This document shows, one piece after another, positions 1 to 64,000 of a stretch of 64,000 nucleotides of DNA. The stretch is from contig NW_027361937.1 of assembly GCF_039654945.1 (NCBI RefSeq), positions 9,610,001 through 9,674,000 of the forward strand. Reading direction: 5' to 3'. This DNA comes from Dendrobates tinctorius (Eukaryota). Position numbers and translations under genes: made by a program. The notes below the pieces were generated by a model, which saw only the letters and a program-made list of their open reading frames with translations, did no database searches and had not been told where the DNA came from. Position 1 is the first letter of the stretch. Each line of letters starts with the position of its first letter.

Positions 1-430
1 TTTGGAGAACCCCTGATGTGCCTAAACAGTGGAAACCCCCCACAAGTGACCCCATTTTGGAAAGTAGACCCCATAAGGGACTTATCTAGATGTGTGGTGA
101 GCACTTTGAACCACCAATTGCTTCACAGAAGTTTATATCGTAGAGCCGTAAAAATAAAAATCATATTTTTTTCACAAAAATGATCTTTTCGCCCCAATTT
201 TTTATTTTCACAAGGGTGACAGGAGACATTGGACCCCAAAAGTTGTCCAATGTGTCCTGAGTATGCCTATACACCATATGTGGGGGTAAATCACTGTTTG
301 GGCGCACAGCAGAGCTTGGAAGGGAAGGAGCACTGTTTGACTTTTTCAACGCAGAATTGGGTGGAATTGAGATCGGACACCATGTCGCGTTTGAAGAGCC
401 CCTGATGTGCCTAAACAGTGGAAACCCCCC
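1..430 (-). repeat. ~390-bp satellite unit(s) internal to the TTAA element
   Basis: CCCTGATGTGCCTAAACAGTGGAAACCCCC recurs at ~11 and ~400; reverse complement matches the units at 61432-64000. Confidence 0.85.
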
Positions 431-434
431 AATT

Positions 435-727
435 CTAACTCCAACCCTAACCCCAACACACCCCTAACCCTAATCCAAGACCTAACCATAATCCTAACCA
501 CAAACCTAACCTTAATCCCAACCCTAACCCAAAACCCTAACCCCAACTCTAGCCCTAACCCTAACTTTAGCCCCAACCCTAACCCTAACTTTATCCCAAA
601 CCCCAACCTTATCCCTAACATTAGCCCCAACCCTAACACTAACTTTAGCCCCAACCCTAACCCTAACTTTAGCCCCAACTCTAACCCTAACTTTAGCCTA
701 ACTCACTTTAGTCCAACTCTAACCCTA
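435..727 (-). repeat. Degenerate telomere-like (CCCTAA)n tract with 18-bp variant unit CCCTAA-CTTTAG-CCCCAA
   Basis: Direct reading; explains the low-complexity PN/LG ORFs 346-678 and 407-745. Confidence 0.9.
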
Positions 728-1312
728 GTGGGAAAATGGAAATAAATACATTTTTTTATTTTATTATTTTTCCCAACTAAGGGGGGGGGGGGGTTTGAGT
801 TACTATTTTTTTTATTTTGATCACTGTGATAGGGTCTATCAGAGTGATCAAAATGAACCAATAGGAAGAAATCTCCTATTGTTACTGGGTGCCAGCCAGC
901 AGATCTCGGCGGGTGCACTGTGCATGCGCCCGCCATTTTCTCCCAGAAGAAGAAGCCGGTTGCCCGGGGGACTTCAGGGGGGGCTGCAAGGACAAAAAAG
1001 GTACCGGGGGTGACCGGGGGACCAGGGGACCCTATTTCTCTCTCCTCTGATGTGTGACGATAGAGAAATTAAATGGAAAATCAGAATTTTTTTGTGGTCA
1101 CCGTAAAACCGTTAATAATGGCAATCGCAACACCGGGGCCGGTAAAAATCGACCCTAATCATGTTCTCTGGGGTCTCGGCTACCCTTGGCAACCGAGACC
1201 CCGGAGAAATTTCGACGCTCGGGGGCGCTATAACCTTAAACCTCAGCGCTGGAGTTTAAGTACCCTTAACTGCTGTCGTTAAAAGGCGTTTGGCCGGTCG
1301 TTAAGGGGTTAA

Positions 1313-3179: not shown

Positions 3180-4540
3180 AACCAGAATAGAAACACGTCA
3201 CCACTTCTGTATTTATCACCCACTCTTGGTTCTTACAGATACTGAGGTAAAATACTGACCAAGTACTGAACGTGTGCACATGGCCTAATAGAAACACGTC
3301 ACCACTTCTGTATTTATCACCCACTCCTGGTTTTGGCTTACAGATACTGAGGTAAAATACTGACCAAATACTGAATGTGTGCACATGGCCTAATAGAAAC
3401 ACATCACCACTTCTGGATTTATCACCCACTCCTGGCTTTGGCTTACAAATACTGAGGTAAAAAACTCACCAAATACTGAGCATGTGCACATGGCCTAATA
3501 GAAACACGTCACCACTTCTGTATTTATCACCCACTCCTGGTTTTGGCTTACAGATACTGAGGTAAAATACTGACCAAATACTGAATGTGTACACATGGCC
3601 TTATAGAAACACGTCACCACTTCTGGATTTATCACCCACTCCTGGTTTTGGCTTACAAATACTGAGGTAAAAAACTCACCAAATACTGAGCATGTGCACA
3701 TGGCCTAATAGAAACACGTCACCACTTCTGTATTTATCACCCACTCCTGGTTTTGGCTTACAGATACTGAGGTAAAATACTGACCAAATACTGAATGTGT
3801 GCACATGGCCTAATAGAAACACATCACCACTTCTGGATTTATCATCCACTCCTGGTTTTGGCTTACAAATACTGAGGTAAAAAACTCACCAAATACTGAG
3901 CATGTGCACATGGCCTAATAGAAACACGTCACCACTTCTGTATTTATCACCCACTCCTGGTTTTGGCTTACAGATACAGAGGTAAAATACTGACCAAATA
4001 CTGAATGTGTGCACATGGCCTTATAGAAACACGTCACCACTTCTGGATTTATCACCCACTCCTGGTTTTGGCTTACAAATACTGAGGTAAAAAACTCACC
4101 AAATACTGAGCATGTGCACATGGCCTAATAGAAACACGTCACCACTTCTGTATTTATCACCCACTCCTGGTTTTGGCTTACAGATACTGAGGTAAAATAC
4201 TGACCAAATACTGAATGTGTGCACATGGCCTTATAGAAACACGTCACCACTTCTGGATTTATCACCCACTCCTGGTTTTGGCTTACAGATACTGAGGTAA
4301 AATACTGACCAAATACTGAATGTGTGCACATGGCCTAATAGAAACACGTCACCACTTCTGGATTTATCACCCACTCCTGGTTTTGGCTTACAAATACTGA
4401 GGTAAAAAACTCACCAAATACTGAGCATGTGCACATGGCCTAATAGAAACACGTCACCACTTCTGTATTTATCACCCACTCCTGGTTCTTACAGATACTG
4501 AGGTAAAATACTGACCAAATACTGAATGAGTGAATGAGGC
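3180..4540 (+). repeat. 105-bp MITE-derived tandem array (~13 units) with 210-bp A/B higher-order period
   Basis: TGGCCT(A/T)ATAGAAAC starts at 3281, 3386, 3491, 3596, 3701, 3806, 3911, 4016, 4121, 4226, 4331, 4436. Each unit ends in the MITE TIR plus TAA/TTA. Confidence 0.95.
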
Positions 4541-23494: not shown

Positions 23495-24955
23495 ATAATA
23501 ATAATTTTTATTTGTATAGTGCCAACATCTTCTGCAGCACTTAACCATTAAGTAGGGACATATACAGAAAGTAAATTAAATACAAGGTAAGACAGATTAA
23601 ACAATTACATTAGGAATGAGGGCCCTGATCAAAAGTTTATAGTCTGCAAGGAAATAGGGGGACACAATAGGTGAAAAGTTATTCTTATTTCAGGTCCAAT
23701 AATTATTATTAAATAGGGATTTACATGCATGCTTCGGTCATCAGCCCATATGTTTAAGTGCAATTATTGAGTGTAGTTATCATGTGCATGGAAGCATTGG
23801 AGATAGATGAACAGGAGGGAGCAGATGCTGAATATTATTTAGAAGGAGGGGACAGGGAAGGGTTAGGTTAGTGAGTTCAGGTGATGTTCTTGTTTAAAGT
23901 GTTTTTAAAGCACAATATAAAGCGTGGGGGCTAGGTATCAGTTGGATGGTCTAGGGGAGTGCATTCCAGAGAACTGGCGCAGCATGGGAGAAGTCTTGGA
24001 GACAGAGGTGAGAGGTTTGGATTATGGAGGATGATAGTTTTAGGTTAGTTTCAGCATGTAGGGCATGTGTAGGGCAATAGACAGATATGACAGAGGAGAT
24101 ATAGGGTGGAGCAGAACTGTCGAGAGCTCTGTGGTTGAAAAATATGAGTTTATATTTTATTCTGTAGCGAATGGGTAACCAGTGTAATGACTGATACAAG
24201 GTGAAGGCATTGGTGAAGTGGCTGTGCAGAAATATGACCCTGGCTACCGCATTCTGGACGGATTGGAGAGGAGAAAGTTTGGTTAGAGGGAGACCGATCA
24301 GAAGAGAGTTGCAATAGTCCAGGCGAGAATGAATAAGAGCAACAGTTAAGGCCCCGTCACACATAGCGACTCACCAGCGATCCCGACAACGATATCAACG
24401 TGTCAGGATCGCTGGTGAGTCGCTACATGATCGCTGATGAGCTGTCAAACAGACAGCTTCACCAGCGATCAGGACCAGCGACGCTGACCGCGAGGCGTCG
24501 CTGTGTACTTTAGTTACCAGCGTGCTGATGCAGTGAGCTGGTAACTAAGGTACACAGAGGGTTTCTAAGGGACGTGCGTCACTTAGAAACCCGATGTGTA
24601 CCTTAGTTACCAGCTCCCTGCATCAGCGCGCTGGTAACTAAGGTACACAGAGGGTTTCTAAGCACAGCGCAGTGCTTAGAAACCCGGCGTTTACCTTAGT
24701 TACCTGCTGATCGCTGGTCTCCCGCCTGTCACACGCAGCGATGCGTGCTGGCCAGCGGGAGACCAGCGACCAAAAAAATGTCCAGGGCTTTCCTACAGCG
24801 ATCAGTGATACCGGCAGGGGGGCCGGTCGCTGATCGCTGTCACACACAGCGATCTCGCTGGTGAGATCGCTGTTACGTCACAAAACTTGTGACTCAGCAG
24901 CGTTCTCGCTAGCGAGATCGCTATGTGTGACGGGGCCCTAAGAGTTTTAGCAACT
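23495..24955 (-). mobile_element. L2 LINE 3' fragment
   Basis: ALIHSRLDYCNSLL...LHWLPIRYRIKYK...APVLWNALP; (ATT)n tail at 23495; interrupted by a MITE at 24349. Confidence 0.85.
24349..24938. mobile_element. Harbinger MITE, AGCGAT family (long subfamily with TTTCTAAG/CTTAGAAAC repeats)
   Basis: TIR GGCCCCGTCACACATAGCGA; TWA flanks. Confidence 0.85.
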
Positions 24956-31665: not shown

Positions 31666-32250
31666 AGGCCCCGTTACACACAGCCATATCGCTGGCGAGA
31701 TCGCTGATTTTGTGACACATCAGCGATCTCTCCAGCGATATCGCTGTGTGTGACATCCAGCAGTGACTGGCCCCCCCGCCGGGTATCGCTGATTGTGCTG
31801 GATCGTCCTGGGCCGTTTTTTCATTGCTGGTCTCCTGCTGGCCAGCACGCATCGCCGCGTGTGGCAGCAGGAGCCAGCGATCAGCGACGCTGCACGCTGG
31901 TATCCAATGTAAACATCGGGTTTCTAAGAGCCGGGTGGCTCTTAGAAACCCGATGTTTACCACGGAAACCAGTGTCATGCTGATATCCAACGTAAAGAGC
32001 GGGTTTCTAAGAGCAGCGCGACTCTTAGAAACTCGCTGTTTACCTTGAATACCAGCATGACACTGGTTTCCAAGGTAAACATCAGGTTTCTAAGAGCCGT
32101 GCGGCTCGTAGAAACCCGAAGTTTACGTTGCATACCAGCTTTCTTGCTGGTCCTGATCGCTGGAGGGGCTGTCTAACGATGTCCCAGCGATCCCATTCAT
32201 GTCGGATCGTTAGTGGGATCGCTGGGACATCGTTATGTGTAACGGGGGCT
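31666..32250. mobile_element. Harbinger MITE, AGCGAT family, long subfamily
   Basis: TAA|AGGCCCCGTTACAC...GTGTAACGGGGGCT|TAA; three internal hairpin repeats. Confidence 0.85.
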
Positions 32251-33475: not shown

Positions 33476-34430
33476 TCAATATCAATCAAATCGCCAAGTA
33501 CATATTACATATATACAAGGAATTCTTTGTGGCAAAGAGGCAACATAATATATAACAACAGATACAACAAGTAACATCTAACAAGACAGATACAGTATAT
33601 AGTCTACACATGACGATTTAATTGTTGAACAGAGAGTGGATAGAAGCTGTTCATATGGCGGTTGGTGCTGCATTTGGGGACTCTGAAGCGACGTCCTGAA
33701 GGGAGTAGTTGGAATGAGGAGTGTCCCGGGTGAGAGGGATCGGATGAAATTTTCAATGCGTGGGATCGAATACTCTTATCATAAAGATCCTGGATTTTAG
33801 GCAGGGGGGAGCCTATAATTCTCTCTGCTGTTCTGAAAGTCCTTTGTAAGCGGAGTTTGTCATGCGCAGTGGCTCCCCCATACCAGACTATCAGAGAGGA
33901 ACAAATCACAGATCTGATGACAGCATTAAAGAATAAGATCAGCAGATTCTTAGACAAACCATATCTTTTCAGCTGACGCAGGAAGAACATCCTCTGTTGT
34001 GCTTTTCTTATAACAGCATCCACGTTTTTCCCCCATTTAAGATCATGAGAGATGATAACACCAAGGAATTTGGTCTCTGTGACCCTAAGAACCACTTCGT
34101 CATGGATGTAGATTGGAAGTATCTCATGTTGATCTTTCCTAAAATCCACAACCATCTCAGCAGTTTTTTTAGTGTTGAGTACAAGATTATTGGCTTTACA
34201 CCAGTCACATATTCTTTCCACCTCACTCCGATACAAGTCTTCAGCATTTCCCCTGATGAGACCAATCAGCGTCATATCATCGGCAAATTTCAAGATTTTT
34301 ACTGAGTCTGCTGAAGAGATGCAATCATTCGTATAGAGAGAAAACAGTAACGGGGACAAAACACACCCCTGAGGTGCCCCGATGTTTGTGACCAAGGTGT
34401 CCGAAGTGAATGGTCCAACTTTTACACTCT
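33476..34430 (-). mobile_element. 5'-truncated Rex1/Babar LINE; open RT C-terminal frame 33604-34395
   Basis: GAPQGCVLSPLLFSLYTNDC, KFADD, LNTKKTAEMVVDFRK, KFLGV, DPSHPGH..F.LLPSGRR; GATT/GATTT tail at 33476-33492. Confidence 0.85.
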
Positions 34431-35031: not shown

Positions 35032-35528
35032 AGGCCCCATTACACAGAACGATGTCCCAGCGATCCCACCAACGATCCGACATGGATGGGATCGCTGGGA
35101 CATCGTTAGGCTGATCGCTGGTGAGCTGTCACATAGACAGCCCCTCCAGCGATCAGGACCAGCGAGCAAGCTGGTTTCCAATGTAAACATCGGGTATCTA
35201 AGAGCCGCGCGGCTCTTGGATACCCGCTGTTTACCCTGGAAACCAGAGTGCACGCTGGTATCTAAGGTAAACAGTGGGTTTCTGAGAGCCGCGCGGCTCG
35301 TAGATACCCGATGTTTACATTGGAGTCCAGCGTCGCTGATCGCTGGTCTCCCACTGCCACACGCAGCGATGCACGCTGGCCAGCGGGAGACCAGCGATCA
35401 AAAAACAGCCCAGGACAATAGTGCACGATCAACGATACCCGGCGTGGGGGTCGGTCGCTGATCCCCGTCACACACAGCCATCTCGCTGGCGCGTCACAAA
35501 ATCAGTGATCTTGTGTGTGACGGGGCCT
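35032..35528. mobile_element. Harbinger MITE, AGCGAT family, long subfamily
   Basis: TAA|AGGCCCCATTACAC...GTGTGACGGGGCCT|TAA. Confidence 0.85.
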
Positions 35529-37568: not shown

Positions 37569-37713
37569 NNNNNNNNNNNNNNNNNNNNNNNNNNNNNNNN
37601 NNNNNNNNNNNNNNNNNNNNNNNNNNNNNNNNNNNNNNNNNNNNNNNNNNNNNNNNNNNNNNNNNNNNNNNNNNNNNNNNNNNNNNNNNNNNNNNNNNNN
37701 NNNNNNNNNNNNN
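37569..37713. other. Assembly gap (145 N) next to a (TA)n run
   Basis: N run. Confidence 1.
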
Positions 37714-38467: not shown

Positions 38468-40065
38468 CAGTGGGGAAAAAAAGTATTTAGTCAGTCAGCA
38501 ATAGTGCAAGTTCCACCACTTAAAAAGATGAGAGGCGTCTGTAATTTACATCATAGGTAGACCTCAACTATGGGAGACAAACTGAGAAAAAAAAATCCAG
38601 AAAATCACATTGTCTGTTTTTTTTTTCATTTTATTTGCATATTATGGTGGAAAATAAGTATTTGGTCAGAAACAAAATTTCATCTCAATACTTTGTGATA
38701 TATCCTTTGTTGGCAATGACAGAGGTCAAACGTTTTCTGTAAGTCTTCACAAGGTTGCCACACACTGTTGTTGGTATGTTGGCCCATTCCTCCATGCAGA
38801 TCTCCTCTAGAGCAGTGATGTTTTTGGCTTTTCACTTGGCAACACGGACTTTCAACTCCCTCCAAAGGTTTTCTATAGGGTTGAGATCTGGAGACTGGCT
38901 AGGCCACTCCAGGACCTTGAAATGCTTCTTACGAAGCCACTCCTTCGTTGCCCTGGCGGTGTGCTTTGGATCATTGTCATGTTGAAAGACCCAGCCACGT
39001 TTCATCTTCAATGCCCTTGCTGATGGAAGGAGGTTTGCACTCAAAATCTCACGATACATGGCCCCATTCATTCTTTCATGTACCCGGATCAGTCGTCCTG
39101 GCCCCTTTGCAGAGAAACAGCCCCAAAGCATGATGTTTCCACCACCATGCTTTACAGTAGGTATGGTGTTTGATGGATGCAACTCAGTATTCTTTTTCCT
39201 CCAAACACGACAAGTTGTGTTTCTACCAAACAGTTCCAGTTTGGTTTCATCAGACCATAGGACATTCTCCCAAAACTCCTCTGGATCATCCAAATGCTCT
39301 CTAGCAAACTTCAGACGGGCCCGGACATGTACAGGCTTAAGCAGTGGGGCACTGCAGGATCTGAGTCCATAGTGGCGTAGTGTGTTACTTATGGTAGGCC
39401 TTGTTACATTGGTCCCAGCTCTCTGCAGTTCATTCACTAGGTCCCCCCGTGTGGTTTTGGGATTTTTGCTCACCGTTCTTGTGATCATTCTGACCCCACG
39501 GGGTGGGATTTTGCGTGGAGCACCAGATCGAGGGAGATTATCAGTGGTCTTGTATGTCTTCCATTTTCTAATTATTGCTCCCACAGTTGATTTCTTCACT
39601 CCAAGCTGGTTGGCTATTGCAGATTCAGTCTTCCCAGCCTGGTGCAGGGCTACAATTTTGTTTCTGGTGTCCTTTGACAGCTCTTTGGTCTTCACCATAG
39701 TGGAGTTTGGAGTCAGACTGTTTGAGGGTGTGCACAGGTGTCTTTTTATACTGATAACAAGTTTAAACAGGTGCCATTACTACAGGTAATGAGTGGAGGA
39801 AAGTGGAGACTCTTAAAGAAGAAGTTACAGGTCTGTGAGAGCCAGAAATCTTGATTGCTTGTTTCTGACCAAATACTTATTTTCCACCATAATATGCAAA
39901 TAAAATGAAAAAAAAACAGACAATGTGATTTTCTGGATTTTTTTTTCTCAGTTTGTCTCCCATAGTTGAGGTCTACCTATGATGTAAATTACAGATGCCT
40001 CTCATCTTTTTAAGTGGTGGAACTTGCACTATTGCTGACTGACTAAATACTTTTTTTCCCCACTG
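38468..40065 (-). mobile_element. Full-length Tc1 (DD34E) transposon, ~205-bp TIRs, TA TSD
   Basis: TA|CAGTGGGGAAAAAAAGTATTTAGTCAGTC ... reverse complement|TA; TIRs nearly identical. Confidence 0.97.
38685..39698 (-). pseudogene. Tc1 transposase with a premature TGA after codon 288
   Basis: Paired-like HTH N-terminus; [24 protein letters not shown] (34 residues between D and E). The frame continues past the TGA at 38832 to ...ANKGYITKY* at 38685. Confidence 0.92.
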
Positions 40066-41171: not shown

Positions 41172-42070
41172 CACTCACTGGCCACTTTATTAGGTACACC
41201 TGTCCAACTGTGTGTTAAGACTTAATTTCTAATCAGCCAATCACATGGCGGCAACTCAGTGCATTTAGGCATGTAGACATGGTCAAGACAATCTCCTGCA
41301 GTTCAAATCGAGCATCAGTATGGGGAAGAAAGGTGATTTGAGTGCCTTTGAACGTGGCATGATTGTTGGTGCCAGAAGGGCTGGTCTGAGTATTTCAGAA
41401 ACTGCTGATCTACTGGGATTTTCACGCACAACCATCTCTAGGGTTTACAGAGAATGGTCCGAAAAAGAAAAAAAATCCAGTGAGCGGCAGTTCTGTGGCC
41501 GGAAATGCCTTGTTGATGCCAGAGGTCAGAGGAGAATGGGCATACTGGTTCGAGCTGATAGAAAGGCAACAGTGACTCAAATTGCCACCCGTTACAACCA
41601 AGGTAGGCAGAAGAGCATCTCTGAACGCACAGTGCGTCGAACTTTGAGGCAGATGTGCTACAGCAGCAGAAGACCACACTGGGTACCACTCCTCTCAGCT
41701 AAGAACAGGCATCTGATGGCTACTTTCAGCAGGATAATGCGCCATGTCATAAAGCTCGATTCATCTCAGATTGGTTTCTTGAACATGACAATGAGTTCAC
41801 TGTACTCAAATGGCCTCCTCAGTCACCAGATCTCAATCCAATAGAGCATCTTTGGGATGTGGTGGAACGGGAGATTCGCATCAGGGATGTGCAGCCGACA
41901 AATCTGCGCCAACTGTGTGATGCCATCATGTCAATATGGTCCAAAATCTCTGAGGAATGCTTCCAGCACCTTGTTGAATCTCTGCCACGAAGAATTGAGG
42001 CAGTTCTGAAGGCAAAAGGGGGTCCAACCCGTTACTAGCATGGTGTACCTAATAAAGTGGCCAGTGAGTG
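41172..42070 (+). mobile_element. Internally deleted Tc1-superfamily element, DD36E (Incomer-type)
   Basis: TA|29-bp perfect TIR CACTCACTGGCCACTTTATTAGGTACACC|TA. N-terminus MGKKGDLSAFERGMIVGARRAG from 41320; deletion at ~41709; shifted frame FQQDNAPCH...SPDLNPIE has 36 residues between D and E. Confidence 0.9.
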
Positions 42071-44439: not shown

Positions 44440-45126
<687 letters not shown>

Positions 45127-45407
45127 TAAGCAATTATTAATAATGGTCACGTAGTGCCAACCTACCTGTCACTAGAATGTCCTTTAATCTTTACTAAGGC
45201 AGTAGTATTTCTTACTCACTATTTCTCTATGGGCACTTTATTATGGATACATATACAACGGATCCATCACATGGACATGTAGGTGTGCATAGTGCTATGC
45301 TGCATTACAGTACGTAAGTGTTGTGAGGCTGCAAGTCCTTTCATATATCCGAGACCGTGTAAAGAATCACCAGCGGGAGAGCCGTTGTGTGTCCGAAGAC
45401 ACAATAA

Positions 45408-59353: not shown

Positions 59354-61002
59354 AAGTGACTTATCGCTGTCAAACAGTACCAGAACTGCGTCCCCTTGAC
59401 AATCGAGACAATTGTTAACACCTCACCGAACAAGCGGTGCAGCCGGCACAAGAGCGCACGGTAGTGGAAATATTGACTCTGCGCACTAAAAATAAATTGT
59501 CCACTTCTGATGAATGGTGCTAATTCTGGGAAGGCCTCCGGAGCGGCAGCCGCTCAAGCCAGTCTTTTATGTCAGTGCGTCCGAGCTAAACATAGAAATA
59601 ATTAAACAGCAGCTTAGGTTTCAGTAAATTTGTTCCAGTGGATGTGGCCAGGAGAAATCAAGAAAGCAAGTTATACTTTATATATTTTTATATGCTAGTT
59701 ACCTGTTGTCTGAGCAATGAGGTGTACATGTAATAAATATTGTGCCAAATAATCTATAATTAACAATGTTTTATCACATTTGGGAGTTTTGCTTGAGAAA
59801 CTACCGAATTACAAGAGATAATCACTATATGTGCAACCGGTGCATTTGCATAGTGAGCCAGTATGTAAAAGCAGCTTGTGTTGTCTATTGCATTACATGT
59901 GTTATTAGCTGATGAATGATTTAGGGAATGTCTAGAAATGACCTAAAAAACTACTGCGGATTCTGTTGTGGATCTATACGTGGATTATGTTTCAGATTTT
60001 TTGCGTATTTCTTCCTAAGCATTGTTGTGACGGGTGAAACCCATAGTGAAAATCTGCAGAAAGGAGTGCCGTTATGCAGATTTTTAACATCTACAGTGCA
60101 GATTTATTTCCTCTCAGAAAATATCTACACACATATTCACTTCTTTGCTGCTACTGTCATCTGTTGCATATTTTCCATCTGTAAATCAGGAAGTAAAATC
60201 TTAAGCAAGTTTGTAACTTGTGAAACTGGCCATACTGGAAGATGGTTAACCCCTTCACGACCTATGACGCCTACGTAGGCGTCATGAAAAGCAGTGCCCA
60301 AACGACCTATGACGCCTACGTAGGCGTCATGCTATAAATAGCCCCCCTGCGGGTCGGGTGACCGGGGTCACTGAAAGGTCACCCGACCCGCACTCAAAGG
60401 ACCCTTCAGAGTTAACACCTGGGGGTGTGGCTTAGCCCCCACGTGCCTACGATCGCTCTGATTGGCTGTTAAAAGTGAAACTGCCAATCAGAGCGATTGT
60501 AATATTTCACCAATGAAAATTGGTGAAATATTACAATCCAGCCATGGCCGATGCTGAAATAGCATCGGACATGGCTGGACACCGAGACCCGACCCCCCCC
60601 ACACCGACTGACGGCACCGATCGGCTGCCGCCACCTTCTGACGGCACCGATCGGCAGCCGCCGTCATGATCTGCCCCCCCCGCCTTCTCTCCTCCCCCCC
60701 AGCCCTCCGATCATCCCCTCTCACCCTCCGATCACCCCCTCACCCTCCTTTGTGCCTCCGATCTCCCGCTATCCGTCCCGGTGTCCTGCCGTCCAGCGTC
60801 ATGGGCGCCGCCATCTTGCAAGATGGCGGGCGCATGCGCAGTGCGCCGAATCGAATCTGCAATGCTGCAGATTCATTTATTTTGATCACTATGATAAACT
60901 TTCATAGTGATCAAAATAAATAAAAAGTAAATCACCGCCCCCTTTATCACCCCCATAGGTAGGGACAAATAATAAAATATTTTTTTTTTTTTTTTTTTTC
61001 CA

Positions 61003-61420
61003 TTAGGGTTAGGTCCAGGGCTAGGGTTAGGGTTAGGGTTAGGGTTGGACTAAGGGTTAGGGTTGGACTAGGGGTTAGGGTTGGACTAGGGGTTAGGGTT
61101 GGACTAGGGGTTAGGGTTGGACTAAGGGTTAGGGTTGGACTAAGGGTTAGGGTTGGACTAAGGGTTAGGGTTGGACTAAGGGTTAGGGTTGGACTAAGGG
61201 TTAGGGTTGGACTAAGGGTTAGGGTTGAATTTAGGGTTAGGGTTGAATTTAGGGTTAGGGTTGGAATTGGGATTAGGGTTGGGGTTGGGATTACGGTTAG
61301 GCTTGTGGTTAGGGTTAGAGTTGGGATTTCGTTAGGGGTGTGTTGGGATTAGGGTTGTGGTTAGGGTTATGATTAGGGTTGGGATTAGGGTTAGGGGTGT
61401 GTTGGCGTTAGGGTTGGAGA
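61003..61420 (+). repeat. Telomere-like tract: TTAGGG plus ~10 copies of the 18-mer TTAGGG-TTGGAC-TA(A/G)GGG
   Basis: Direct reading. Confidence 0.95.
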
Positions 61421-61431
61421 TAGAATTGAAA

Positions 61432-64000
61432 GGTTTCCACTGTTTAGGCACATCAGGGGCTCTCCAAACGCGACATGGAGCCACCATTTATTCCAGCCAA
61501 TTTTGCGTTCAAAAAGTCAAACGGTGCTCCCTCCATTTCGAGCCCCGACGTGTGCCCAAACAGTGGTGTACCCCCACTTATGGGGTATCAGGGTACTCAG
61601 GAAAAATTGCACAACAACTTTAGGGGTCTAATTTCTCCTGTTACCCTTGGGAAAATAAAAAAATGGGGGCGAAAATAATTATTTTTGTGGAAAAAAAAGA
61701 TTTTTTATTTTCACGGTTCTGCGTTATAAACTTCTGTGAAGCACTTGGGGGTTCAACGTGCTCACCACACATCTAGATAAGTTCCTTGGGGGGTCTAGTT
61801 TCCAAAATGGGGTCACTTGTGGGGGGTTTCCACTGTTTAGGTACATCAGGGGCTCTGCAAACGTAACATGACGCCCACAGACCATTCCATCAAGTCGGCA
61901 TTTCAAAGCGTCACTACTTCCCTTCCGAGCCCCAACGTGTGCCCAAACAGTGGTCCCCCCCCATATATGGGGTACCAGCGTACTCAGGACAACCTGGACA
62001 ACAACTTTTGGGGTCCAATTTATCCTGTTACCCTTGTGAAAATAAAAAATAGTGGGCTAAAAATCACTTTTTGAGGAAAAAAAAATATTTTTTTATTTTC
62101 ACAGCTCTGCGTTATAAACTTCTGTGAAGCACTTGGGGGTTCAAAGTGCTGACCTCACATCTAGATTAGTTCCTTAGGTGATATAGTTTCCAAAATGGGG
62201 TCACTTGTGGGGGGTTTCCACTGTTTAGGTACATCAGGGGCTCTGCAAATGTAGCATGACGCCCACAGACCATTCCATCAAGTCTTCATTTCAAAGCGTC
62301 ACTACTTCCCTTCCGAGCCCCAACGTGTGCCCAAACAGTGGTCCCCCCCCACTTATGGGGTACCAGCGTACTCAGGACACACTGGACAACAACTTTTGGG
62401 GTCCAATTTATCCTGTTACCCTTGTGAAAATAAAAAATAGTGGACTAAAAATAATTTTTTGAGGAAAAAAAAATATTTTTTTATTTTCACGGCTCTGCGT
62501 TATAAACTTCTTTGAAGCACTTGGGGGTTCAACGTGCTCACCACACATCTATATTAGTTTCTTGGGTGATCTAGTTTCCAAAATGGGGTCATTTGTGGGG
62601 GGTTTCCACTGTTTAGGTACATCAGGGGCTCTGCAAACATAACATGACGCCCACAGACCATTCCATCAAGTCGGCATTTCAAAACGTCACTACTTCCCTT
62701 CTGAGCCCCAACGTGTGCCCAAACAGTGGTCCCCCCCACATATGTGGTACCAGCGTACTCAGGACAAGCTGGACAACAACTTTTGGGGTCCAATTTATCC
62801 TGTTACCTTTGTGAAAATAAAAAATAGCAGGCTAAAAATTTATTTTTTGAGGGAAAAAAATATTTTTATTTTAACGGCTCTGCGTTATAAACTTCTGTGT
62901 AGCACCTGGGGGTTCAAAGTGCTCACTATGCATCTAGATAAGTTCCTTAGGGGGTCTAATTTCCAATATGGGGTCATTTGTGGGGGAGCTCCAAAGTTTA
63001 CGCACACAGGGGCTCTGCAAACACAACATGGTGTCCGCTAACGATTGGAGCTAATTTTCCATTCAAAAAGTCAAATGACGCTCCTTCCCTTCTGAGTCAT
63101 GCCGTGCGCTCAAACAGTGGTTTTCCCCCACATATGGGGTACCAGTGTACTCAGGACAAACTGGACAACAACTTTTGGGGTCCAATTTATCCTGTTACCC
63201 TTGGGAAAATAAAAAATAGCGGGCTAAAAAATCATTTTTGAGGAAAAAAAATTATTTTTTTATTTTCACTGCTCTGCGTTATAAACTTCTGTGAAGCACT
63301 TGGGGGTTCAAAGTGCTCACCACACATCTAGATAAGTTCCTTCGGGGGTCTAGTTTCCAAAATGGGGTCACTTGTGGGGGAGCTCCAATGTTTAGGCACA
63401 CAGGGGCTCTCCAAATGCGACATGGTGTCCGCTAACGATTGGAGCTAATTTTCCAATCAAAAAGTCACATGGCGCTCCTTCCCTTCCGGGCCTTGCGGTG
63501 CGCCCAAACAGTGGTTTATGACCACATATGAGATATTGATGTACTCAGGAGAAATTGCCCAACAAATTTTAGGATCCATTTTATCCTGTTGCCCATGTGA
63601 AAATGAAAAAACTGAGGCCAAATAAAATTTTTGTGAAAAAAAAAAGTACTTTTTTTTTTTACAGATCAATTTGTGAAGCACCTGGGGGTTCAAAGTGCAT
63701 ACTATGCATCTAGATAAGTTCTTTGGAGGGTCTAGTTTCCAAAATGGGCTCACTTGTGGGGGAGCTCCAATGTTTAGGCACACAGGTACTCTTAAAACAA
63801 GACATGGCAACCGCTAAACATTCAAGCATATTTTACATTCAAAAAGTAAAATGGCGCTCCTTGCCTTCTGAGCCCTGCCGTGCGCCCAAATAGTGGTTTA
63901 TGACCACATATGAGGTATCAGTGTACTCAGGAGAAATTGCCCAACAAATTTTAGGATACATTTTATCCTGTTACCCATGTGAAAATGAAAAAACTGATGC
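61432..64000 (+). repeat. ~388-bp tandem satellite (>6 units)
   Basis: GCAC(T/C)TGGGGGTTCAA at 61741, 62129, 62517, 62902, 63296, 63678. Confidence 0.95.

What the first reader, a model, noticed from the sequence alone, without database searches (positions are those of the whole stretch)
60250..64000. piggyBac-type DNA transposon that carries telomere-like repeats plus a satellite, present twice in the window
Seen: both window edges (1-1308 on minus, 60250-64000 on plus) show the same modular order: TTAA|CCCCTT(A/C)ACGACC terminus, ~600-750 bp of hairpin-rich subterminal DNA, a 300-400 bp TTAGGG-variant tract, then a ~388-bp satellite. The tract-to-satellite junction is the same in both (GGTTTCCACTGTTTAGGCACATCAGGGGCTC), while the subterminal sequences have diverged. 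Established: Xenopus Tx1D/Tx2D elements are TTAA-flanked and carry ~400-bp internal tandem repeats. Inference: the telomeric tract is an integral, conserved module of the element. That would make it a cut-and-paste vehicle for interstitial telomere-like sequences, possibly recruiting TRF1/TRF2 or forming G-quadruplexes.
Basis: partly seen in the sequence, partly recalled or inferred. Interest (0 to 1): 0.75.

Follow-up and report, generated by a model that had tools for sequence, protein, structure and literature searches.

The report
TTAA transposon carrying telomere-like repeats
Both window edges hold a partial copy of a very abundant frog jumping-gene family that inserts at TTAA and carries a decayed block of chromosome-end-type repeats followed by a ~390-base tandem repeat, so such repeats can be scattered by transposition; elements of this general kind are already known.

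Summary
Both window edges show TTAA|CCCCTT(C/A)ACGACC, then a palindrome-rich subterminal region, a degenerate TTAGGG-like tract and a 388-bp tandem array, in that order.

The two tracts descend from one ancestor. Their last ~85 nt share non-canonical variants, and both arrays start in the same phase with the same unit subtype.

Contigs from public runs support a mobile unit:
- The flank is single-copy and depth rises 10^3-10^4-fold at about 60250.
- Another copy ends exactly at the TTAA.
- In a related species the orthologous flank runs 39 nt past the TTAA without the element.

- No far end, target-site duplication or transposase was found, so "piggyBac" rests on TTAA plus a 13-nt C-initial terminus.
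- The modules differ in abundance by orders of magnitude, so the element is a mosaic. The satellite and tract end far outnumber this terminus.
- The tract is only 27-38% canonical TTAGGG.
- TRF binding and G-quadruplex formation are untested.

The closest known cases are Xenopus Tx1D and Xmix/Xstir. The scan had already noted this family on other DNA of the same genome (s1-382805, s1-381451, s1-369680). I rate it a new variant of a known kind, of moderate interest.

The parts
60246..60249 (+). TTAA next to the right copy's terminus (presumed target site)
   Evidence: In one search the orthologous contig of organism B aligns up to 60249 and then continues unlike the element. Another organism-A copy aligns from 60246.
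60250..60262 (+). 13-nt terminus CCCCTTCACGACC of the right copy (R)
   Evidence: 2 hits, 0.01 expected; identity with the left copy (L) starts here.
60258..60332 (+). Subterminal direct repeat: two copies of ACGACC + a 22-nt perfect palindrome (60264-60285, 60309-60330). Candidate transposase-binding sites.
   Evidence: -26.6 kcal/mol, z -9.3.
60446..60582 (+). Three consecutive perfect or near-perfect hairpins containing CCAAT boxes. This module is far more abundant than its neighbours in all three organisms.
   Evidence: I3-I5.: -59.2 kcal/mol, z -18.9. CCAAT motifs; depth about 300k against 27-92k beside it in X1, and 670-840k against 2-5k in X11.
60546..60846 (+). C-rich, CpG-rich segment (GC 67-70%, CpG o/e 0.93-1.08). 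Mostly specific to the R subfamily.
   Evidence: 60650-60799 is low or absent in organisms B and C. Contigs of another organism-A sample (X5) are near-identical, with 2-5 differences in 123-153 nt.
60820..60845 (+). Block conserved between R and L (22 nt, 60823-60844) that matches YY1 (AAGATGGCG) and NRF1 (GCGCATGCGC) consensus sites
   Evidence: high depth in all three organisms.
60872..60924 (+). Conserved 20-bp-stem hairpin (TTTTGATCACT...)
   Evidence: -17.5 kcal/mol, z -8.3. The L counterpart keeps pairing with a different inner stem.
60925..61002 (+). Poly-C / A-rich / T-run spacer before the tract
61003..61431 (+). Degenerate TTAGGG-like minisatellite with an 18-nt higher-order unit. 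The G-rich strand reads away from the terminus.
61432..64000 (+). Tandem array of about 388-bp units running off the window. Unit 1 is type I, units 2-4 type II, unit 5 intermediate, units 6-7 type III.
   Evidence: 'goes back 390-393' joints in three organisms.
1309..1312 (-). TTAA next to the left copy's terminus
1296..1308 (-). 13-nt terminus CCCCTTAACGACC of the left copy (L)
915..936 (-). Conserved 22-nt YY1/NRF1-like block, left copy
811..857 (-). Conserved hairpin, left copy
   Evidence: -13.3 kcal/mol, z -5.7.
427..728 (-). Degenerate TTAGGG-like tract, left copy, with a 24-nt higher-order unit
1..426 (-). 388-bp tandem repeat, left copy (1.1 units, type I), running off the window

Best explanation
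These are the same-type ends of two different insertions of a non-coding (non-autonomous) cut-and-paste DNA transposon family of a frog genome.

The family inserts at TTAA. It ends in a 13-nt C-initial terminus followed by subterminal repeats and palindromes. I infer that it is mobilised in trans by a piggyBac-type transposase encoded elsewhere.

Its inherited interior is modular. In order it holds a variable, subfamily-specific subterminal segment, a conserved YY1/NRF1-like block, a conserved hairpin, an A/T-rich spacer, a decayed telomere-like minisatellite, and a ~390-bp tandem-repeat array.

The telomere-like tract was acquired once, in an ancestor of both subfamilies. It has since turned over in place by slippage or unequal exchange, which explains the different 18-nt and 24-nt higher-order units. 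The 390-bp array likewise expands and homogenises locally.

Each transposition therefore seeds a new interstitial telomere-like site together with a satellite array.

Shown: the boundary, the TTAA, high copy number, presence in three species, probable absence at the orthologous site in one relative, and common descent of the tract.

Inferred: the transposase family, the far end, and that whole units including the arrays move.
For: (1) The terminus pattern occurs twice against 0.01 expected. R/L similarity begins exactly at TTAA and the flanks are unrelated.

(2): the flank 59600-60199 has single-copy depth (4.45 in X1), and the bin 60200-60274 jumps to 15,546, with higher values further in. 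X1 record 2 (a 1785-nt contig) matches only 60246-60549 and then runs on unlike, so it is a third copy bounded by TTAA. X7 record 25 (organism B, single-copy depth) aligns to the flank up to 60249 and has 39 more letters that do not match the element, consistent with an empty or precisely excised site.

(3) The tract is inherited. Its last ~85 nt are about 88% identical between R and L, including shared non-canonical variants. Its first units are shared. It sits between the same conserved modules. Contigs cross the tract-to-satellite junction in another organism-A sample and in organism C (records 20, 11, 12). In most genomic copies the junction reads as in L (G at 61406, GG at 61430-61431).

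(4) The first satellite unit of R is closest to the first unit of L (0.86), and both arrays start in the same phase.

(5) All TTAGGG-like sequence in the 64 kb lies inside the two copies.

(6) The terminus length (13 nt), the first C and the subterminal direct or palindromic repeats fit the published piggyBac-like architecture (PMC5381638). Kolobok termini (AG/AGGRR) do not fit (PMC6004289).

(7) The R-type subterminal DNA appears as near-identical contigs (2-5 differences in 123-153 nt) even in a 21-million-letter run, and its CpG o/e is about 1 against 0.55 background. Both point to a recent burst.
Against: - No opposite terminus occurs in the window, so neither inverted termini nor a duplicated TTAA is shown.
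- No piggyBac transposase is present in the window and none could be tied to this terminus.
- Position 4 of the terminus (C) lies outside the published piggyBac motif.
- Summed contig depth differs by orders of magnitude between modules. In X1 it is 8-90k for the terminus and subterminal region, about 300k for the triple hairpin, about 0.3-0.8M for the tract end, and up to 7.7M for the satellite. The proportions also differ between species. Many tract/satellite copies therefore cannot belong to R-type elements and may not lie in any element. The tool warns that these depths are not copy numbers.
- The subterminal-to-tract junction (60965-61055) was masked by the reads tool, so continuity there in other copies is not shown.
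- The empty-site reading rests on one contig whose overhanging letters I could not see.
Confidence: 0.62

Rival explanations
1. This is a satellite with a conserved 'head', not a currently mobile composite. The ~390-bp satellite, its telomere-like leader and the YY1/NRF1 block + hairpin form the real repeated unit. That unit spreads by unequal exchange, segmental duplication or reinsertion of extrachromosomal circles. The TTAA/CCCCTT terminus is a relic of the old transposon in which the satellite was born, or of a MITE family that lies next to array heads. Whole units no longer transpose, or never did.
For: -: the satellite and tract end are about 10-1000 times deeper than the R-type terminus.
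- In organism C the terminus bins are only 0.3-1.8k while the block, tract end and satellite reach 0.5-16M.
- Most sequence preceding a unit start is another satellite unit (loose ends at 61432).
- The subterminal DNA between the terminus and the conserved block is unrelated in R and L.
- No far end was seen.
Against: - Two diverged copies both have the same 13-nt terminus plus TTAA in the same orientation, 360-560 nt upstream of the conserved block. That is very unlikely by chance.
- The repeat boundary is sharp at TTAA in three copies, and the element is absent at the orthologous site of a relative.
- The R-type segments have thousands-fold depth with near-identical contigs, which fits a recent dispersed burst.
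- The excess depth of the satellite is expected anyway if each element carries many units and several terminus subfamilies exist.
Confidence: 0.22
2. It is the same kind of element but belongs to another TTAA- or TWA-targeting superfamily (Kolobok/T2-MITE, PIF/Harbinger as in note s1-381451, Sola or an undescribed group) rather than piggyBac.
For: - No transposase is linked to the element.
- Position 4 of the terminus deviates from the piggyBac motif.
- TTAA targeting is not unique to piggyBac (PMC6004289).
Against: - Kolobok and T2-MITE termini start with AG/AGGRR, whereas this one starts with CCCC.
- All three copies seen have T at position -4, so the site reads TTAA and not a 3-bp TWA.
- A first C, a terminus of about 13 nt and subterminal direct or palindromic repeats are the piggyBac-like pattern.
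Confidence: 0.12
3. The tracts are independent telomerase additions at repaired breaks, or the window edges are true or former subtelomeres.
For: The repeats are TTAGGG-like and lie next to a satellite, as at many chromosome ends. Break repair is the textbook origin of short interstitial telomeric sites (PMC9693754).
Against: - The copies share non-canonical variants and the same position between the same modules.
- The junction is present in very many contigs of three species.
- The two copies are inverted around 59 kb of ordinary, transposon-rich, single-copy-flanked DNA.
- The tract is more canonical near the terminus and more degenerate towards the satellite.
Confidence: 0.02

Closest known systems
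Tx1D / Tx2D of Xenopus laevis (non-autonomous piggyBac family; PMC4494074)
   Same: A frog, non-coding, TTAA-associated element with short inverted termini. From my memory of Garrett & Carroll 1986 and Garrett et al. 1989 (not checked here), its interior is mostly two kinds of ~400-bp tandem repeats. The present array likewise shows ordered subtypes of ~388-bp units.
   Different: No Tx1D sequence was at hand, so homology is untested. As far as I know, no telomere-like tract has been described for Tx1D. No Tx1L-type LINE insertion was seen here. The host is a different frog lineage.
Xmix / Xstir of Xenopus (T2-MITE, Kolobok superfamily; PMC6004289)
   Same: A TTAA-targeting non-autonomous frog element whose internal segment was amplified into tandem repeats that 'ride' on the transposon and become a large repeat family.
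   Different: Kolobok termini are AG/AGGRR, not CCCC. The Xstir units are short. There is no telomere-like tract.
Heterochromatic and short interstitial telomeric sequences of vertebrates, frogs included (reviews PMC9693754 and PMC6410037; Pipa carvalhoi, PMC6803351)
   Same: Degenerate TTAGGG arrays away from chromosome ends, typically next to satellites and transposons. [quoted passage not shown]
   Different: In those reviews the transposon route is a proposal based on neighbourhood. Here the tract lies at a fixed offset inside a bounded element and is shown to be inherited between copies.
Telomere-bearing elements (TBE) of Oxytricha (Tc1/mariner; bioRxiv 10.1101/2025.03.17.643836, seen)
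   Same: DNA transposons that carry telomere-type repeats as a fixed part.
   Different: In TBEs the repeats sit at the very ends of an autonomous ciliate element. Here a long degenerate tract lies ~750 nt inside a non-coding vertebrate element.

Membership tests
piggyBac superfamily (non-autonomous member) | TTAA at the insertion site | tested here: met
   TTAA directly precedes the terminus in R and L. A third copy aligns from 60246, and the orthologous contig of organism B aligns up to 60249. Duplication on both sides could not be checked.
piggyBac superfamily (non-autonomous member) | Short TIR (12-19 bp, mean 14) starting with C; first six bases C[C/A/T][C/A/T][T/G/A][T/A/G][T/G/A] (PMC5381638) | tested here: inconclusive
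   A 13-nt terminus is shared by R and L and begins CCCCTT. Five of six positions fit, and position 4 is C. Inverted repetition is not shown because no far end is available.
piggyBac superfamily (non-autonomous member) | Two inverted termini, each flanked by a TTAA target-site duplication | not testable with these tools
   Both copies run off the window. No reverse-oriented partner terminus lies within 64 kb. No frog genome could be searched.
piggyBac superfamily (non-autonomous member) | A cognate DDD transposase with the same termini somewhere in the genome | not testable with these tools
   The nine longest of the 16 ORFs of 130 aa or more in the window, scanned against Pfam, gave only Tc1/Sleeping-Beauty-like transposase, reverse transcriptase and WW-domain hits. 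Earlier-note searches for piggyBac transposase returned nothing.
piggyBac superfamily (non-autonomous member) | Precise excision or an empty site that keeps a single TTAA | tested here: inconclusive
   The organism-B contig (X7 record 25) matches the flank to 60249 and continues 39 nt unlike the element. The overhanging letters and the far flank are not available.
Kolobok / T2-MITE | TTAA target with termini starting RR (AG, AGGRR) (PMC6004289) | tested here: not met
   The terminus starts CCCC.
   Three of three copies have T at -4, giving TTAA. TAA is contained in it, and without the far end the length of the duplication is unknown.
Tx1D-like composite element | Interior made of ~400-bp tandem repeats inside a TTAA-flanked non-autonomous element | tested here: met
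   The 388-bp array starts 1186 nt from the terminus, with at least 7 units in three ordered subtypes. This shows resemblance in architecture only. Sequence homology to Tx1D was not tested.
Break-repair interstitial telomeric site (telomerase addition) | Independent addition of telomeric repeats at unrelated sites, with no shared variant pattern or shared flanks | tested here: not met
   R and L share non-canonical variants and the same flanking modules. The junction is multi-copy in three species.

The most novel reading that the evidence does not exclude
The element is a dispersed TERRA-like transcription unit. A CpG-rich segment ends in a conserved YY1/NRF1-type block (60820-60845; also 915-936 in the diverged copy) and is kept at high copy in three species. 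It lies ~160-180 nt upstream of the G-strand of the telomere-like tract, in the same orientation as a subtelomeric promoter relative to a telomere. It could therefore drive UUAGGG-like RNA, and satellite RNA behind it, from thousands of interstitial sites. The 11-26 TRF-type half-sites per tract could also draw shelterin to them.
Probability: 0.08. Interest if true: 0.75.

Novelty: new variant of a known kind. Interest (0 to 1): 0.45.

Why it matters
Frog karyotypes often show (TTAGGG)n FISH signals away from chromosome ends, and these are commonly read as relics of fusions or repaired breaks. The reviews list transposon-borne telomeric repeats only as a possibility (PMC6410037, PMC9693754).

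Here a bounded, TTAA-inserting, very high-copy element carries an inherited telomere-like tract together with a satellite seed, in at least three related species. If a genome-wide census confirms this, three things follow:
- Interstitial telomere signals in these frogs should not be used as fusion markers.
- It would give a concrete route by which one transposon family spreads both a minisatellite and a major satellite.
- It would supply thousands of natural sites for testing whether degenerate telomere-like DNA binds shelterin, stalls replication or breaks.

The architecture itself (a non-autonomous TTAA element with internal tandem repeats) is known from Xenopus, so the gain is incremental.

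Tried and rejected
1. Fetching other copies through proteins. Two ORFs of the element, the tract/satellite junction ORF and the recurrent 68-aa satellite ORF, found no homologue.

2. Exact-pattern scans with two conserved satellite strings found nothing: metagenome contigs (two scans), viral contigs and prokaryote genome contigs.

3. Rfam gave only sub-threshold chance hits to the hairpins. No tRNA- or SINE-like origin was seen.

4. The satellite is not derived from the subterminal region; only A/T-run matches appeared. No piece of the element occurs between 1320 and 60200.

5. The classic Tx1 papers and Christensen 2000 are not held. The Tx1D repeat structure is therefore quoted from memory.

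6. No held paper prints the terminus or the satellite strings.

7. The true-subtelomere and telomerase-healing readings are rejected (see rival explanations).

8. Kolobok is rejected on its terminus.

9. Depths were not converted into firm copy numbers, because the tool states they are summed contig depths.

It masked 60965-61055 as a repeat, so that junction stays unverified.

11. The organism names are coded and I did not try to decode them.
Full report
WHAT IS THERE

The window's right edge (R, + strand) and left edge (L, - strand) each start with TTAA followed by a 13-nt terminus. In R this is CCCCTTCACGACC at 60250-60262. In L it is CCCCTTAACGACC at 1308-1296. The 17-nt pattern occurs only at these two places in 64 kb, against 0.01 expected. 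In a pairwise alignment the similarity begins exactly at the TTAA, and the outside flanks are unrelated.

Behind the terminus, R has 753 nt and L about 580 nt of subterminal DNA. R holds seven inverted repeats. They include two copies of ACGACC + a 22-nt perfect palindrome right behind the terminus, and three back-to-back hairpins at 60446-60582. L holds two inverted repeats.

Most of this DNA cannot be aligned between R and L. The last ~200 nt before the tract can, and they are collinear:
- a 22-nt block at 60823-60844 / 915-936, found nowhere else in the window;
- a 49-nt hairpin at 60872-60924 / 811-857, whose inner stem differs in sequence between the copies yet still pairs;
- a poly-C/A-rich spacer.

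THE TRACT

R 61003-61431 and L about 427-728 are telomere-like rather than telomeric. Only 38% (R) and 27% (L) of the bases lie in canonical TTAGGG, and the longest perfect runs are 18 and 12 nt.

R is dominated by about ten copies of an 18-nt higher-order unit (94% matches in TRF). L is dominated by a 24-nt unit. The two tracts nevertheless share their first units. More tellingly, they share their last ~85 nt at about 88% identity, including the same non-canonical variants. [quoted passage not shown] This excludes independent telomerase additions.

All 28 matches to a TTAGGG dimer (up to 1 mismatch) in the window lie in these two tracts.

THE ARRAY

TRF reports period 388, 6.6 copies at 85%. 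Resolved in register, R has seven units:
- unit 1 (61432-61824), which is closest to L's first unit (0.86);
- units 2-4, a second subtype (0.90-0.95 among themselves);
- unit 5, intermediate;
- units 6-7, a third subtype.

Both arrays start in the same phase. The informative facts are therefore the shared phase and the homologous tract end in front of it. The unit is unrelated to the subterminal DNA and matches no Rfam family.

EVIDENCE FROM PUBLIC RUNS

Contigs were laid on 59600-61830 at 80% likeness or better. X1 is organism A, probably the source sample. X5 is another sample of A. X7 is organism B and X11 is organism C.

(a) The flank 59600-60199 has single-copy depth: 4.45 in X1, about 4-6 in X7 and about 12-16 in X11. 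The bin holding 60250 jumps to 15,546 in X1 and 6,786 in X7, and depth rises further inside.

(b) A 1785-nt contig of A matches only 60246-60549 and then runs on unlike. This is a third copy, and it too is bounded by the TTAA.

(c) A 629-nt single-copy contig of B aligns to the flank in two pieces (59674-59975 and 60033-60249, about 93% identity). It ends the match exactly after the TTAA, although 39 more of its letters follow. The element's first bases are therefore not there. This fits an empty site or a precisely excised one. I could not see the overhanging letters, and the far flank is outside the window, so I call it probable, not proven.

(d) 'Goes back 390-393' joints show the satellite is tandem in all three organisms.

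(e) Contigs cross the tract-to-satellite junction in X5 (61332-61465) and X11 (61373-61545, 61373-61524). More than 118 contigs per run cover 61430-61431, and nearly all read GG there, as in L.

(f) Abundance is far from uniform. In X1 the summed depths are:
- 55-92k at 60275-60424;
- about 300k over the triple hairpin;
- 8-27k at 60575-60799;
- 76-87k over the conserved block and hairpin;
- 4-9k at 60950-61099, partly masked by the tool at 60965-61055;
- 0.1-0.8M along the tract;
- 0.9-7.7M in the satellite.

In organism C the terminus bins are only 0.3-1.8k. The triple hairpin, the conserved block, the tract end and the satellite reach 0.5-16M. The tool warns that these figures are not copy numbers, so I use them only for order of magnitude.

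(g) The R-specific segment 60527-60792 appears as near-identical contigs (2-5 differences in 123-153 nt) even in a 21-million-letter run. Its CpG o/e is about 1, against 0.55 for the window. Both suggest a recent burst of this subfamily.

INTERPRETATION

The best reading is that these are ends of two separate insertions of a non-autonomous, TTAA-inserting DNA transposon family. Its inherited interior contains a telomere-like minisatellite and a ~390-bp tandem array.

The family is a mosaic. The terminus and a core (block, hairpin, tract, first satellite unit) are shared, while the 360-560 nt between them are subfamily-specific.

The excess of satellite and tract-end sequence over this terminus means one of two things. 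Either many further subfamilies exist and arrays are long, or much of the satellite now lives outside elements. That is the main rival reading (a satellite with a conserved head, confidence 0.22).

SUPERFAMILY

Published piggyBac-like elements have TTAA targets and TIRs of 14 +/- 2 bp starting with C. The motif is C[C/A/T][C/A/T][T/G/A][T/A/G][T/G/A]. They often have subterminal direct or palindromic repeats (PMC5381638). This terminus fits in length, in its first C and in five of six positions, and it has such repeats. Position 4 is C.

Kolobok/T2-MITE elements also target TTAA but end in AG/AGGRR (PMC6004289), so Kolobok membership fails. A Harbinger reading (note s1-381451) is not favoured, because all three copies show TTAA rather than only TAA.

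With no far end, no target-site duplication and no transposase, piggyBac membership stays a well-motivated inference.

COMPARISON WITH WHAT IS KNOWN

- Tx1D of Xenopus is described as a non-autonomous piggyBac family (PMC4494074). From memory, and not verifiable in the held papers, its interior consists of two kinds of ~400-bp tandem repeats. The ordered subtypes here resemble that.
- Xmix/Xstir shows tandem repeats 'riding' on a TTAA-targeting frog MITE.
- Reviews of interstitial telomeric sequences list transposition by mobile elements as a possible origin, supported only by neighbourhood (PMC6410037; PMC9693754; PMC6803351).
- No held paper contains the terminus or the satellite strings.

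The scan itself has already reported the same kind of element on other pieces of this genome. The notes are s1-382805 (its follow-up reached a similar conclusion), s1-381451 and s1-369680. I treated them as leads only.

FUNCTION CLAIMS

The tracts contain 26 (R) and 11 (L) YTAGGGTTR half-sites. G-quadruplex-type motifs number 3 and 2 with loops of 7 nt or less, and 10 and 5 with loops of 12 nt or less. Protein binding or G4 formation is therefore possible, but nothing here tests it.

The conserved 22-nt block matches YY1 and NRF1 consensus sites. In R it ends a 300-nt CpG-rich segment, about 160 nt upstream of the G-strand tract. That suggests an internal promoter reading into the tract, which I list as the low-probability novel case. 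No RNA data could be consulted, because the single run search was used for DNA.

VERDICT

This is a new variant of a known kind, a non-autonomous TTAA element with internal tandem repeats that here includes an inherited telomere-like module. Interest is moderate (0.45).

Noticed in passing
window 60446-60582: Three consecutive near-perfect hairpins with palindromically arranged CCAAT boxes (-59 kcal/mol as ssDNA, z -18.9). Their contig depth is 3-400 times that of the DNA on either side in all three organisms. This looks like a separate hyper-abundant module or a nested MITE inside the element.
   Followed up: partly
window 3186-4532: A 105-bp tandem repeat, 12.9 copies at 92% identity, about 1.9 kb from the left copy's terminus. 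It is unrelated to the 388-bp satellite.
   Followed up: no
window 24502-24708, 31893-32139, 35158-35318: Three short tandem arrays (periods 83-93 nt) whose units are related long palindromes built around ...GGGTTTCTAAGAGCCGCGCGGCTCTTAGAAACCC.... Probably a hairpin-forming MITE-like family present at least three times in the window.
   Followed up: no
window 38832-39698 (-) and 41320-41844 (+): Tc1/mariner (Sleeping-Beauty-type) transposase ORFs with HTH_SB, HTH_Tnp_Tc3_2 and DDE_3 domains. The first is 288 aa and looks partly intact.
   Followed up: partly
window 33604-34395 (-): A reverse-transcriptase fragment (RVT_1) followed by an ALKBH8_N-type match. Likely a LINE remnant.
   Followed up: no
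window 44563-45129 (+): A 188-aa ORF with a WW domain (E 1.5e-10). Possibly an exon of a host gene, which would place the window in or near a gene.
   Followed up: no
window 37569-37713: A run of 145 N (assembly gap or masked stretch).
   Followed up: no
window 59976-60124: Part of the single-copy flank just left of the insertion is missing or unalignable in the relatives. There is a 57-nt gap in the organism-B contig, and depth is about 0 at 59975-60124 in organism C. This suggests an indel or another lineage-specific insertion beside the element.
   Followed up: no
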